This document shows positions 1 through 3,000 of a stretch of 64,000 nt of DNA, one piece after another. The notes under the pieces were generated by a model. The model worked only from the letters and a program-made list of their open reading frames with translations, made no database searches and was not told the DNA's origin. Every line of letters begins with the position of its first letter. Within the stretch, counting starts at the first letter, position 1. Source of the stretch: Mytilus trossulus (taxonomy: Eukaryota); contig NC_086373.1 in the NCBI RefSeq assembly GCF_036588685.1, positions 88,164,001 to 88,228,000 of the forward strand, read 5' to 3'. A program made the translations under genes and the position numbers.

Positions 1-94
1 CCATTACTGCAACTTACCAGTACAATGTTTAAATAGATATAAGGAGATATAATTTAGCATGTTTATTTTGTGTTTTATTTTATTTATTTTACAG

Positions 95-3000
95 CAAACA
101 GATTATACAAAAGAAGAACTGAAGACTAAGATAGATTTAGGATGCAACTTTTATGTTCAAGCTAAAGTGTAAGGATGTCTTATAGACCAACAATTTTTTG
201 TTTATAGATATAAGAAGATGTGGTATGAGTGGCAATGAGTGACAACTCTCCATCTAAGTCACAATTTGTAAAAGTAAACCCACAGTGTACAAGCGGACAG
301 TGACACAAAACGGAAGTTGCTGATCTGTCTGACGGCGATCGGCTCGTTGTTTTTCAAAAAAATATAGAATATCAACACAAAGTGTCCCATAATGGATTGT
401 TCAGAAGCTCAAGGTAAGTGAATAACTACAATGATGTATTTTTGACCATTTAAAGCTTATTTTATGCTTTTAGCATCAACCGTTTTTTTAAAATAACTCC
501 TGATCATGAAGAGGGGTCAAAATTTTGCGATTTTTCGAGTCATAAATCTTAACAAAACTCCGAAAATTCAAACATTTTCAAGATTTTTAATCGATACATA
601 GTTGAATAATCATATTCCGCATACACACACAAAAGTTTGGTTCATTTTTTTTTATTATATTGTCACAATTGAATCTTTTCTATTCAAAGTGTACTGTCCG
701 CCTCGTTGCCACCGTATGTTTTCATACTGTCCGATTCGTTGGTCATATTCATGATCGATATCTTAAGCAAAAGTAAGATTGAAACATGCAATTTATCCAC
801 ATTTAAACTTTATTCAACACAGATACTGTCTATGATTATATATGGAAAATATTTATAGATTATATATTCAGCTTGGATCTCGTGTCAATTAAAGGGGGAC
901 ATTGGTCACTCTTCCAGAACCTTTACTCATGTCTGCTGCTCGTATTCATCGTTTGCGGACCTTGTTGTTAGATTCTCTACCAATATAATATTCTAATAAA
1001 TGCATGGTGAATTCAGTACACATGTTCCCTATGACATGATCTTTCTAATTTAATGCAAAATTAAGAGTTTTGATCCAATTTTACGGCCTAATGAACATAG
1101 AAAACGATAGTGCGAGTGGGGCATCCGTGTACTATGGTCACATTCTTGTTTAAAAGTTATTTTAAAACAACAGTAGATGATAGTGAGTGATGCAGCGCAC
1201 TTAAGAACATCAATTAAATAATGTTTTGCTTATATTTTCAGATATACATGATGAGTACTAGTAATCCTTATAGTTGTACAACATGCTTGTTTTCTGTGTC
1301 AAACGTTTATAAATATAAAAAAGAAGATTTGGTGTAATTGCCAATGAGACAACTCTAAACAAGAGAACAAATTAAATGACACAGAAATGAACAACTATAG
1401 GTCACCGTACGGCTTTCAACAATGAGCAAAGCCCATACCGCATAGTCAGCTATAAAAGGCCTAGAAATAACTTTTGTTGCATGGTTGTATTTTTCATGAA
1501 AAGTTATTACCCCTATTTATGTTTTTAAGTGATAAAAATAACAATGTTCCACATGAATGTATGAATAAATATACCATAAAAATCACCTACGTGCCCCATT
1601 TTCCTAAAACAAACTAGAGAAACGTATATTAAATTTTCATGTGCATGCATTAACAATGCTTTTTATATGTAATAATCAGTAACATTTTATAAATGTTGAT
1701 ATTTCCTAGGAAATCGGTCATGAATGTGGATAAATTGCATGTTTCAATCTTACTTTTGCTTAAGATATCGATCATGAATATGACCAACGAATTGGACAGT
1801 ATGAAAACATACGGTGGCAACGAGGCGGACAGTACACTTTGAATAGAAAAGATTCAATTGTGACAATATAATAAAAAAAAATGAACCAAACTTTTGTGTG
1901 TGTATGCGGAATATGATTATTCAACTATGTATCGATTAAAAATCTTGAAAATGTTTGAATTTTCGGAGTTTTGTTAAGATTTATGACTCGAAAAATCGCA
2001 AAATTTTGACCCCTCTTCATGATCAGGAGTTATTTTAAAAAGACGGTTGATGCTAAAAGCATAAAATAAGCTTTAAATGGTCAAAAATACATCATTGTAG
2101 TTATTCACTTACCTTGAGCTGCTGAACAATCCATTATGGGACACTTTGTGTTGATATTCTATATTTTTTTGAAAAACAACGAGCCGATCGCCGTCGGACA
2201 GATCAGCAACTTCCGTTTTGTGTCACTGTCCGCTTGTACACTGTGAAACCATTATGGGTCAAAGGATGGTCTTTAAAAGGGAGCCTTGGCTCATTGAAAA
2301 TTATATATAAACGCGAAAAATTGGTACAAAAGGTTGTAGGATAATAAATTACAACATTACCTCCTTCACTTGTTCAAAAACAAACACAAACACAAACCAT
2401 TAAAAAAAATTCTGAAGCAAGCTTCTATTATTATGCATATAGGTAAGCATTCATGTCTTGCAGACACATCAGTCAATTGAAATATGAGCATTGCATGAAT
2501 TCCATGGAGTGTACAATTTTTATCTTGAAGATAACTCACTACCAAGACACATGTCAATTTATTCTTCATTATTTGAATAAATTTAAAAGTTTATCTAATT
2601 TGGATTTAAATGGCTAAAATTCAAATTTACTTATTAATGTATTTATGAAAAAACACATAAAGAAAGCCAATGTACATGTGTAATTGTTAAAAACAAAGAA
2701 TTGTTATTTATTTTGCAGACCTGACACATCAATGATATTTGTTAATATTGGATTTGGGTTTTATGTAGAACTTACCCATGATGAAGCTTTGAAGTTTATT
2801 ACAAAGAAAACAGATAATTTAGATGAAAAAGCCAAGATCCTGACAAAAGATGCCACATCAGTAAAAGCTCACATAAAAGTAGTATTAGAGGTAAAAAAAA
2901 ATCAACTTTCTGTTCTGTTTTCTATATAATGTCAGTACTATCAATCAACTGAACTGTGATTTATAATGGACAGGTGGCTATTTTGTGTTAATAAGCTTTA

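What the first reader, a model, noticed from the sequence alone, without database searches (positions are those of the whole stretch)
281..2245. Young transposon ending in the exact V(D)J RSS heptamer CACAGTG, with a 5-bp TSD and unusually long (523 bp) TIRs
Seen: both ends read CACAGTG; AAACC is duplicated on each side; the TIRs differ at only about 4 positions; an A-rich nonamer-like ACAAAACGG (305-313; RSS nonamer is ACAAAAACC) follows the heptamer after 17 nt; CGGACAG/CTGTCCG motifs recur inside the TIR. Known: heptamer-like termini plus a 5-bp TSD are hallmarks of Transib and RAG-like (ProtoRAG) transposons, the ancestors of RAG1/2, and their TIRs are normally short. Inference: this is a recently mobilised non-autonomous derivative, implying a recently active Transib/RAG-like transposase in this genome. 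The symmetric long TIRs suggest a foldback made from two copies of one end.
Basis: partly seen in the sequence, partly recalled or inferred. Interest (0 to 1): 0.8.

Follow-up and report, generated by a model that had tools for sequence, protein, structure and literature searches.

The report
P-element-like transposon with RSS-like ends
The element is a real, recently mobile, gutted DNA transposon in a mussel genome, but its family's transposase folds like the Drosophila P-element enzyme rather than RAG1/Transib, so "CACAGTG ends plus a 5-bp duplication" does not by itself mark a RAG ancestor.

Summary
Window 281-2245 is a 1965-bp element with 523-bp inverted ends that differ at 4 positions. 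Its termini are CACAGTG/CACTGTG and it is flanked by AAACC. The genome (Mytilus) holds at least 40 end copies about 99% alike. All 16 paired copies have 5-bp duplications.

The Transib/RAG reading does not hold. The window copy is an internal-deletion derivative that keeps only the first 16 codons of a gene. Longer copies keep up to residue 486 of that gene. Intact relatives at 31-46% identity encode a 1440-1477-aa protein with an N-terminal zinc finger, a YqaJ nuclease domain and a DDE RNase H domain. Those relatives have CAC/CACAGTG ends and, where both ends were read (two families), 5-bp duplications.

The only strong structural match of the DDE domain is the P-element transposase (Z 19.6). 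Transib, RAG1 and BbRAGL score 7, and Hermes scores 5.5. The second, convergent gene is a C2H2 zinc-finger protein, not RAG2-like. No RAG1-core match was found in the genome. No autonomous copy of this exact family was found in the assembly.

The protein family is large (2715 clusters), unnamed, and found in molluscs and an annelid. I found no description of it in the papers searched.

Two other first-stage notes in this genome flagged the same kind of element.

The parts
276..280 (.). Left copy of the 5-bp target-site duplication, AAACC
   Evidence: Read directly. Uninterrupted copies of the host repeat carry AAACC once (loose ends at 280).
281..803 (+). Left terminal inverted repeat, 523 bp, starting with CACAGTG(T)
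   Evidence: At least 40 copies about 99% alike in the genome.
293..301 (+). Subterminal motif GCGGACAGT. It recurs inverted at 693-701 and 726-733, and at 325-331 in the right-arm version. Candidate transposase-binding sites (inference).
392..419 (+). Possible short first exon ending in a consensus splice donor GTAAGT (414-419) inside the inverted repeat. Both ends of family B carry GTAAGT at a similar distance. Inference only.
   Evidence: sequence reading. No RNA data.
804..1241 (+). 5' internal region shared with all longer copies. A pyrimidine tract and an AG acceptor (1240-1241) lie just before the coding start.
   Evidence: Window 281-1294 is 99% identical to the left 1013 bp of copies L058, L032 and L054.
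1248..1295 (+). Remnant of the transposase gene: the first 16 codons (MMSTSNPYSCTTCLFS), which begin the N-terminal zinc finger
   Evidence: Longer copies extend it to 146-486 residues, homologous to the 1467-aa protein.
1290..1294 (.). Internal-deletion junction with 5-nt microhomology (TTTTC)
   Evidence: The left and right alignments to longer copies overlap by 5 nt.
1295..1722 (+). 3' internal region shared with all longer copies. It includes a stretch (about 1301-1500) that is itself a very high-copy repeat.
1723..2245 (-). Right terminal inverted repeat, 523 bp, ending with CACTGTG
   Evidence: Contigs in four runs break exactly at 2245/2246 (table 8).
2246..2250 (.). Right copy of the target-site duplication, AAACC
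   Evidence: The empty-site joint 277->2248 in run X2.

Best explanation
Window 281-2245 is an internally deleted, non-autonomous copy of a young cut-and-paste DNA transposon family of Mytilus.

Shown: the full-length ancestor of the family carried two convergent genes. One encodes a protein of about 1470 aa, built from an N-terminal CxxC...HxxxxH zinc finger, a helical/coiled-coil region, a YqaJ (lambda-exonuclease-like) nuclease domain and a C-terminal DDE RNase H domain of the P-element/THAP9 structural type. The other encodes a small multi-C2H2 zinc-finger protein.

Inferred mechanism: the large protein is the transposase. It recognises the CACAGTG(T) tips and the repeated GCGGACAGT-type motifs in the long inverted ends, through its own zinc finger or through the accessory zinc-finger protein. 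It excises the element and reinserts it with a 5-bp stagger. The fused YqaJ nuclease probably processes transposon or donor-site ends. The window copy arose by abortive gap repair, leaving a deletion junction with 5-nt microhomology, and was then mobilised in trans.

The RSS-like heptamer and the 5-bp duplication are traits of this P-related lineage. They are convergent with Transib/RAG, or very deeply shared, and are not evidence of a RAG-like transposase.
For: **Anatomy and copies**
- Searches give the TIRs, the termini, and 16 of 16 five-bp duplications.
- Element sizes range from 1.6 to 6.6 kb with different breakpoints.
- The window copy equals the left 1014 bp plus the right 956 bp of longer copies, with a 5-nt overlap.

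**Coding remnants**
- The family's internal ORF is homologous to residues 1-486 of a 1467-aa ORF.
- The truncated zinc-finger ORF in copy L031 is homologous to the 204-aa five-finger C2H2 ORF of family B (Pfam).

**Intact relatives with the same hallmarks**
- Family B: two 11.4-kb copies 98-99% alike, ends CACAGTGTGG..., 80-bp TIRs, duplications TAAGG and GGATG. Its only ORFs of at least 100 aa outside the ends are the 1467-aa ORF and the convergent zinc-finger ORF.
- Family C: terminus CACAGTGTAG..., with at least 571 candidate copies; 37 of the 40 scored begin at the first base.
- Family D: 1440-aa ORF, ends CACGGTCG..., TIRs of 485 bp or more, duplication TAAGT.

**Protein identity**
- Pfam YqaJ matches 14 of 19 and 21 of 30 members (best E-value 2.9e-14); TNP-like_RNaseH_N matches 7 of 19 (best 1.4e-5).
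- The AF2 model of residues 700-1467 matches the P-element transposase 6p5a at Z 19.6, rmsd 3.4 A, over 290 residues.
- That is the only Z of 8 or more among 48,161 representative chains. HzTransib, BbRAGL and RAG1 score 7.0, and Hermes 5.5.
- Conserved candidate catalytic residues are SD.DR, SFDGQW and SLEAENFF, plus a D(2)H motif.

**Recent activity**
- Mean pairwise identity of the ends is about 98.5%.
- An empty-site contig is present in run X2.
Against: - No autonomous copy of this exact family was found in the assembly. The longest stops at residue 486, so the enzyme that moved these copies has not been seen.
- The P-element assignment rests on a predicted structure (mean pLDDT 67) and weak Pfam matches. 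Sequence searches of the PDB found nothing.
- CMC, Chapaev and Kolobok transposases have no solved structure, so they cannot be excluded by fold comparison alone.
- Two defining P-superfamily features are absent: a THAP domain and a 7-8 bp duplication.
- The roles proposed for the zinc fingers, the YqaJ domain and the TIR-embedded exon are inference.
- Repbase and Dfam could not be searched.
Confidence: 0.8

Rival explanations
1. It is a non-autonomous Transib or RAG-like (ProtoRAG-type) element, moved by a RAG1L/Transib transposase encoded elsewhere. The P-like gene fragments are passengers.
For: The ends are the exact RSS heptamer and all duplications are 5 bp. These are the hallmarks listed for Transib and for protostome RAGL elements (PMC7204232).
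Against: - The coding remnant lies in the same place in every copy, and its intact relatives carry the same CAC ends and 5-bp duplications with no other large ORF.
- The DDE domain matches the P element at Z 19.6 against 7.0 for Transib, RAG1 and BbRAGL.
- The partner gene is a C2H2 zinc finger, not a kelch protein.
- PF12940 finds nothing in the genome. This is a weak negative, because the control genomes were silent too.
- The ends do not fit the protostome RAGL consensus CACTWMCAAACKTYKBB beyond CAC.
Confidence: 0.03
2. The family belongs to the CACTA/Mirage/Chapaev(/Transib) clade, whose members also have CA..TG ends and 2-5 bp duplications.
For: The CAC...GTG termini and a short duplication fit the range Kojima gives for the 'CMCT' clade (PMC12730594). 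No CMC structure exists, so the fold comparison cannot directly exclude it.
Against: [quoted passage not shown] No such conserved motifs exist in this family; the conserved Cys/His positions there are only the D(2)H motif and single residues.
- As relatives of RAG1/Transib they should match those structures best, but the P element wins by 12 Z units.
- The Pfam matches are to the TNP-like (P/THAP9) RNase H model, not to CACTA models.
Confidence: 0.05
3. It is a separate, so far unnamed superfamily that only shares a distant common ancestor with P. This is a question of rank rather than mechanism.
For: - No THAP domain, and a 5-bp rather than a 7-8 bp duplication.
- A fused YqaJ domain, an accessory zinc-finger gene, and a size of about 1470 aa.
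- Sequence searches do not reach the P-element transposase.
- 2715 clusters form a large self-contained family.
- No paper in the library describes it.
Against: Z 19.6 over 290 residues is strong for a distant relative, and 7 of 19 members touch the Pfam TNP-like RNase H model. A specialist might therefore file it as a deep branch of P. Repbase was not available to check for an existing name.
Confidence: 0.4

Closest known systems
P-element superfamily (Drosophila P, 1360/Hoppel, Galileo; THAP9)
   Same: The RNase H catalytic domain with its inserted domain is the only strong structural match (6p5a, Z 19.6). There are weak matches to Pfam TNP-like_RNaseH_N. Internal-deletion derivatives are abundant. 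Like Galileo, some families have very long inverted ends that carry repeated motifs (PMC4168063, PMC3688188).
   Different: - The duplication is 5 bp, not 7-8 bp.
- There is no THAP domain; a CxxC...HxxxxH finger takes its place.
- A YqaJ nuclease domain is fused upstream of the RNase H domain.
- A second, convergent C2H2 zinc-finger gene is present.
- The protein is about twice as long.
- The ends are CACAGTG or CACGG rather than CATGATG.
Transib / RAG-like (ProtoRAG, protostome RAGL) transposons
   Same: 5'-CAC (here the full CACAGTG) termini, an invariable 5-bp duplication, and two convergent genes between the ends.
   Different: The transposase fold is P-like, with Z only 7 to Transib, RAG1 and BbRAGL. 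The C(2)C and H(3-4)H motifs are absent. The partner gene is a C2H2 zinc finger rather than RAG2L. There is no conserved A-rich block after the heptamer.
ISL2EU (PHIS superfamily)
   Same: It is the only eukaryotic DNA transposon group in the searched literature reported to encode a YqaJ nuclease (PMC4482050).
   Different: ISL2EU has a PIF/Harbinger-type DDE and 2-bp duplications. Here the DDE is P-like and the duplication is 5 bp.
hAT5 (hAT group with 5-bp duplications)
   Same: A 5-bp duplication (cited in PMC12730594).
   Different: Hermes matches at only Z 5.5-6.0, and there is no hAT dimerisation-domain match in Pfam.

Membership tests
Transib / RAGL | Termini beginning 5'-CAC, resembling the RSS heptamer | tested here: met
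   CACAGTG/CACTGTG in families A, B and C, and CACGGTC in family D.
Transib / RAGL | 5-bp target-site duplication | tested here: met
   19 of 19 paired ends across families A, B and D.
Transib / RAGL | RAG1-core/Transib-type transposase | tested here: not met
   The best fold match is the P element at Z 19.6; Transib, BbRAGL and RAG1 score 7.0. There is no PF12940 match in the proteins or in the genome (this genome-wide negative is weak).
Transib / RAGL | Convergent RAG2-like kelch gene (RAGL only) | tested here: not met
   The convergent gene is a five-finger C2H2 protein.
CMCT clade (EnSpm/CACTA, Mirage, Chapaev, Transib) | [quoted passage not shown] | tested here: not met
   No such conserved columns in the 19- and 7-sequence alignments.
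CMC (EnSpm/Chapaev) | 2-4 bp duplication | tested here: not met
   Always 5 bp.
P superfamily | P/THAP9-type RNase H catalytic domain with an inserted domain | tested here: met
   6p5a_A at Z 19.6, rmsd 3.4 A, 290 residues, unique above Z 8 among 48,161 chains. PF21787 matches 7 of 19 members, best E-value 1.4e-5, below the curated cut-off for p48 itself.
P superfamily | DDE catalytic triad conserved | tested here: inconclusive
   D in SFDGQW and E in SLEAENFF are invariant. The first D lies in SD.DR, where either D may be N but never both. Residue-level superposition on the P element was not available.
P superfamily | N-terminal THAP DNA-binding domain | tested here: not met
   No THAP match in Pfam. 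The N-terminus carries a CxxC-x12-HxxxxH finger.
P superfamily | 7-8 bp target-site duplication (PMC4168063) | tested here: not met
   5 bp in 19 of 19.
P superfamily | GTP-binding insertion domain and GTP dependence | not testable with these tools
   The structural alignment spans chain residues 202-565 of 6p5a, but no Pfam match to the GTP-binding-domain model was seen. This needs biochemistry.
Kolobok | TTAA target-site duplication (from my own knowledge of Repbase classification) | tested here: not met
   None of the 19 duplications is TTAA; all are 5 bp of varied sequence.
ISL2EU | PIF/Harbinger-type DDE with 2-bp duplication | tested here: not met
   P-like fold and 5-bp duplications.
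hAT5 | hAT-type transposase with C-terminal dimerisation domain | tested here: not met
   Hermes matches at Z 5.5-6.0, and there is no PF05699 match.

The most novel reading that the evidence does not exclude
These elements represent an undescribed superfamily-level lineage of eukaryotic cut-and-paste transposons. It combines a P-related DDE transposase fused to a YqaJ exonuclease with an accessory C2H2 zinc-finger gene. It is widespread in Spiralia (molluscs, annelids), still active in Mytilus, and has DNA hallmarks (CAC/CACAGTG ends, 5-bp duplication) that duplicate those used to recognise RAG/Transib relatives. The fused nuclease may take part in end processing during transposition.
Probability: 0.4. 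Interest if true: 0.65.

Novelty: new variant of a known kind. Interest (0 to 1): 0.55.

Why it matters
Heptamer-like CAC ends plus a 5-bp duplication are routinely used as DNA-level signatures when hunting for RAG/Transib-type transposons in invertebrates. Here a large, young family carries the exact RSS heptamer and an invariable 5-bp duplication, yet is driven by a P-element-like enzyme. Such signatures need the protein to back them.

The protein family itself appears only as 'YqaJ domain-containing' or 'uncharacterized' in databases, despite 2715 clusters at 50% identity. Linking it to defined transposon ends gives it a function.

It also offers a natural fusion of a DDE transposase with a lambda-exonuclease-type nuclease to study. 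With intact 1440-1477-aa ORFs and near-identical copies, it is a candidate active transposon for molluscs, which lack genetic tools.

Tried and rejected
- **RAG1 in the genome.** A PF12940 (RAG1) six-frame search of the whole genome gave no match, but the tool's control genomes were silent too, so this is a weak negative.
- **Sequence searches of the PDB.** Neither the 1467-aa protein nor a 19-sequence profile found anything below E 0.5.
- **ESM Atlas.** It returned only an unnamed YqaJ cluster at score 0.81.
- **N-terminal domain.** Residues 140-520 were folded (pLDDT 80). Both Foldseek and the wide VIA search returned only generic helical-hairpin/coiled-coil matches, so that domain stays unassigned.
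- **Autonomous copy of this exact family.** The family-specific 370-aa segment matches at high identity only in truncated copies. The longest ends at residue 486.
- **The 22-kb element on contig 26.** Two 22-kb intervals on contig 26 are bounded by these ends with a matching CTTAA duplication. They show no transposase beyond residue 107 in the 10 kb I could read, and no match.
- **Nonamer.** Rejected as chance.
- **Other superfamilies.** ISL2EU, Kolobok, hAT5 and CMC/Chapaev were considered and rejected on duplication length, motifs and fold (see the membership tests).
- **Yuan & Wessler 2011.** The paper is not held in the library.
- **Operators' rules.** No N stretches were met in the region and none were filled.
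Full report
**1. The observation**

Reading the window and the repeat finder confirm the described element.
- The arms are 281-803 and 1723-2245, 523 nt each and 99% complementary, with 919 nt between them.
- The arms differ at exactly four positions: 330, 405, 484 and 733.
- The termini are CACAGTG and CACTGTG, and AAACC flanks both sides.
- CGGACAG is at 294, and CTGTCCG is at 694 and 727. The right arm also keeps a copy at the mirror of 325-331.

The 'nonamer-like' ACAAAACGG is only a 6/9 match. Matches that good occur 2800 times in the window, against about 2450 expected. It is not conserved in related families, so I treat it as chance.

**2. Copies and target-site duplications**

The 523-bp end finds at least 40 scored matches, out of 96 candidates, at about 99% identity across the 1.3-Gb genome.

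Pairing the ends gives elements of about 1.6 to 6.6 kb in at least 15 different sizes. One further interval of 22 kb is duplicated on contig 26.

Every pair I could read has an exact 5-bp duplication of varied, AT-leaning sequence:

AAACC, TTTAT, ATACA, TTAAT, CTTTA, ATATC, GCAAT, AGTAC, CTTTT, ATTAT, AGTAT, ATAAA, ACATC, TTATT, CTCAT, CTTAA.

That is 16 of 16. Mean pairwise identity of distinct end sequences is about 98.5%.

Laying contigs of four public runs on window 1-3000 showed three things.
- The element sits inside a very high-copy SINE-like repeat. Other copies of that repeat run from AAACC straight into ATTATAGGTCAAAG. The window's right flank reads ATTATGGGTCAAAG. These act as paralogous empty sites.
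- Contigs in the runs break exactly at 2245/2246.
- One contig in run X2 joins 277 to 2248, skipping 1970 bp, which is the element plus one duplication copy. This is a single contig with only 27 letters on its shorter side, so I count it as supportive rather than conclusive evidence for an empty allele.

The same ends are abundant in all four runs, which are labelled as four different organisms.

**3. What the window copy is**

The window element equals the left 1014 bp plus the right 956 bp of the longer copies, at 99% identity. The two alignments overlap by 5 nt (TTTTC, 1290-1294). That is a simple internal deletion with junction microhomology.

It keeps only 16 codons (1248-1295, MMSTSNPYSCTTCLFS) of an ORF that longer copies extend:
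- to 146 residues;
- to about 260 residues (L042/L052);
- to residue 486 in one 4.4-kb copy on contig 11.

A family-specific search found no copy that goes further. No autonomous copy of this exact family was seen in this assembly.

**4. The gene these fragments come from**

The N-terminal ORF has relatives at 34-37% identity that sit in open frames of 1474-1494 aa. Four families are distinguished below.

| Family | Where | Large ORF | Identity to family B protein (p48) | Terminus | Inverted ends | Duplication |
|---|---|---|---|---|---|---|
| A | this window and its copies | fragments, up to residue 486 | 40% over 144-486 | CACAGTGTAC... | 523 bp | 5 bp, 16/16 |
| B | two 11.4-kb copies, contigs 41 and 10, 98-99% alike | 1467 aa | query (p48) | CACAGTGTGGGAACGG... 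| 80 bp | TAAGG, GGATG |
| C | contig 4 | 1477 aa | 43% | CACAGTGTAGATAC... | other end not read | not read |
| D | contig 6 | 1440 aa | 31-33% | CACGGTCGCG... | at least 485 bp, 97% alike | TAAGT |

For family C, at least 571 candidate copies match the terminus, and 37 of the 40 scored begin at the first base.

In family B, the only other ORF of at least 100 aa away from the ends is a convergent 204-aa protein with five C2H2 fingers. A 152-aa frame near the right end was not followed up. A truncated homologue of the zinc-finger ORF (35% identity, E 6e-20) lies in the 5.8-kb family A copy L031.

So 5'-CAC ends, a 5-bp duplication and two convergent genes characterise the whole group. The full heptamer CACAGTG(T) characterises the clade A/B/C. 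Long inverted ends occur in some families (A, D) and not in others (B).

**5. What the large protein is**

Pfam results:
- YqaJ at residues 510-660. It matches 14 of 19 and 21 of 30 homologues, with a best E-value of 2.9e-14.
- A weak match to TNP-like_RNaseH_N, the P/THAP9 model, at 795-865. It matches 7 of 19 homologues, with a best E-value of 1.4e-5.
- No RAG1, hAT, CACTA or THAP model matches.

An AlphaFold2 model of residues 700-1467 was built from a 19-sequence alignment. Its mean pLDDT is 67, and the core is mostly 75-95. It was searched three ways:

| Search | P element (6p5a) | RAG1 | HzTransib | BbRAGL | Hermes |
|---|---|---|---|---|---|
| Foldseek, PDB | first, E 4.5e-3 | next, E about 0.1 | - | - | - |
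| VIA second look at Foldseek hits | Z 19.6, rmsd 3.4 A, 290 residues | Z up to 8.1 | 6.6 | - | 6.0 |
| VIA wide, 48,161 representative chains | Z 19.6, the only chain at Z 8 or more | 7.0 | 7.0 | 7.0 | 5.5 |

Conserved candidate catalytic residues, in the numbering of the 768-aa fragment:
- the D of SFDGQW and the E of SLEAENFF, both invariant;
- a D(2)H motif, LLDCHH;
- an SD.DR motif after the first strand. In the sequences matched there, either D may be N but never both: DxD is most common, DxN occurs 8 times, NxD 9 times.

The C(2)C and H(3-4)H motifs are absent. Kojima (PMC12730594) describes these as shared by EnSpm, Mirage, Chapaev, Transib and RAG1.

The N-terminal 140-520 region folds confidently (pLDDT 80). 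It returns only coiled-coil look-alikes, so it may be a dimerisation element. It remains unassigned.

**6. Spread and naming**

The word-based search found relatives named only 'YqaJ viral recombinase domain-containing' or 'uncharacterized' in Mytilus galloprovincialis, M. edulis, Batillaria and Ruditapes.

A profile search of 1.84 billion representatives found 2715 clusters at E of 1e-3 or better, and 692 at 1e-30 or better. Two of ten sampled clusters come from the annelid Owenia.

In the paper library, the only eukaryotic transposons linked to YqaJ are ISL2EU/PHIS elements, which have a 2-bp duplication and a PIF-type DDE. A survey of bivalve transposons reports one Transib element and does not list this group (PMC10294476). 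I could not consult Repbase or Dfam, so an existing name cannot be excluded.

**7. Mechanism, shown versus inferred**

Shown:
- the element is a deletion derivative;
- the family is young and has inserted many times with 5-bp duplications;
- the ancestral element carried a P-like DDE protein fused to YqaJ, plus a C2H2 partner gene;
- related intact elements share the same end and duplication hallmarks.

Inferred:
- the 1470-aa protein is the transposase. It is the only DDE-fold ORF between the ends;
- the repeated GCGGACAGT-type motifs in both orientations are its binding sites, or those of the zinc-finger partner. Multiple THAP sites in Galileo's long ends are a precedent (PMC3688188);
- the YqaJ domain processes ends or assists donor repair;
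- deletions arise by abortive gap repair;
- each inverted end may carry a promoter and a short first exon for its adjacent gene. Consensus GTAAGT donors lie 100-135 nt inside both ends of families A and B, and an acceptor lies just before the ORF. That would explain why the ends can grow long.

The enzyme source for family A is unknown. It may be an autonomous copy missing from this haplotype or assembly. Less likely, it is cross-mobilisation by a relative, since the ends share only CACAGTGT.

**8. Comparison with known families**

The element works like, and structurally belongs near, the P-element group. It fails two of that group's defining features: the THAP domain and the 7-8 bp duplication. 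It also adds a nuclease fusion and a second gene.

It meets the DNA-level criteria of Transib/RAGL: CAC ends, a 5-bp duplication and convergent genes (PMC7204232). It fails every protein-level criterion.

CMC/Chapaev, hAT5, Kolobok and ISL2EU each fail at least one tested defining feature.

**9. Verdict**

'Young non-autonomous transposon' is supported, and 'Transib/RAG-like' is not.

The finding is still of moderate interest. It is a large, apparently unnamed, recently active P-related lineage whose ends and duplication mimic the RAG/Transib signature.

Two other first-stage notes in this genome (s1-818535, s1-826823) describe elements with the same ends. This agrees with the copy census here.

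Noticed in passing
window 200-280 and 2251-2300; also 1001-1200 and 1301-1500: These stretches belong to extremely high-copy repeats, with summed contig depths of 10^5-10^6 in four runs. The transposon inserted into one such SINE-like repeat (it contains ...TGGTATGAGTGGCAATGAGTGACAACTCTCC...). A related stretch lies inside the element's own 3' region in all copies.
   Followed up: partly
window 95-173: A short exon with an AG acceptor at 93-94 and a GTAAGG donor around 168-173. It encodes QTDYTKEELKTKIDLGCNFYVQAK. The transposon lies about 110 bp into the following intron.
   Followed up: partly
G000 contig 26: 2801710-2823734 and 2854960-2877690 (L059, L060, L002, L003): Two 22-kb intervals bounded by family A ends have identical flanks and the same CTTAA duplication. 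This is a very large or composite element that was later copied by a roughly 53-kb segmental duplication. The interior could be read only in part; no transposase was seen.
   Followed up: partly
L048:5049-7352 (protein residues 808-812 of the 1467-aa ORF) and homologues: In the SD.DR motif after the first RNase H strand, the two aspartates vary in a complementary way among the library homologues matched: DxD is most common, DxN occurs 8 times, NxD 9 times, and NxN never. Either position may supply the catalytic carboxylate.
   Followed up: partly
L055 2576-3113 and L031 3372-3770: The long spacer between the zinc-finger gene and the right end carries tandem repeats in family B (about 160-bp periodic self-matches). 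In family A it holds a repetitive TDRQTD/GRTDG-type open frame. Their function is unknown.
   Followed up: no
L050 7583-8033 and 325-611: Family C has 290-460-bp near-palindromic stretches, with self reverse-complement matches at 74-83%, just upstream of the transposase ORF and near the other side of the locus. They may be arrays of inverted binding motifs.
   Followed up: no
G000 contig 1: 87684440-87689062: About 475 kb upstream of the window lies a degraded member of the same superfamily. It has a family C-like end and ORF fragments 42-49% identical to the 1467-aa protein, with stop codons.
   Followed up: no
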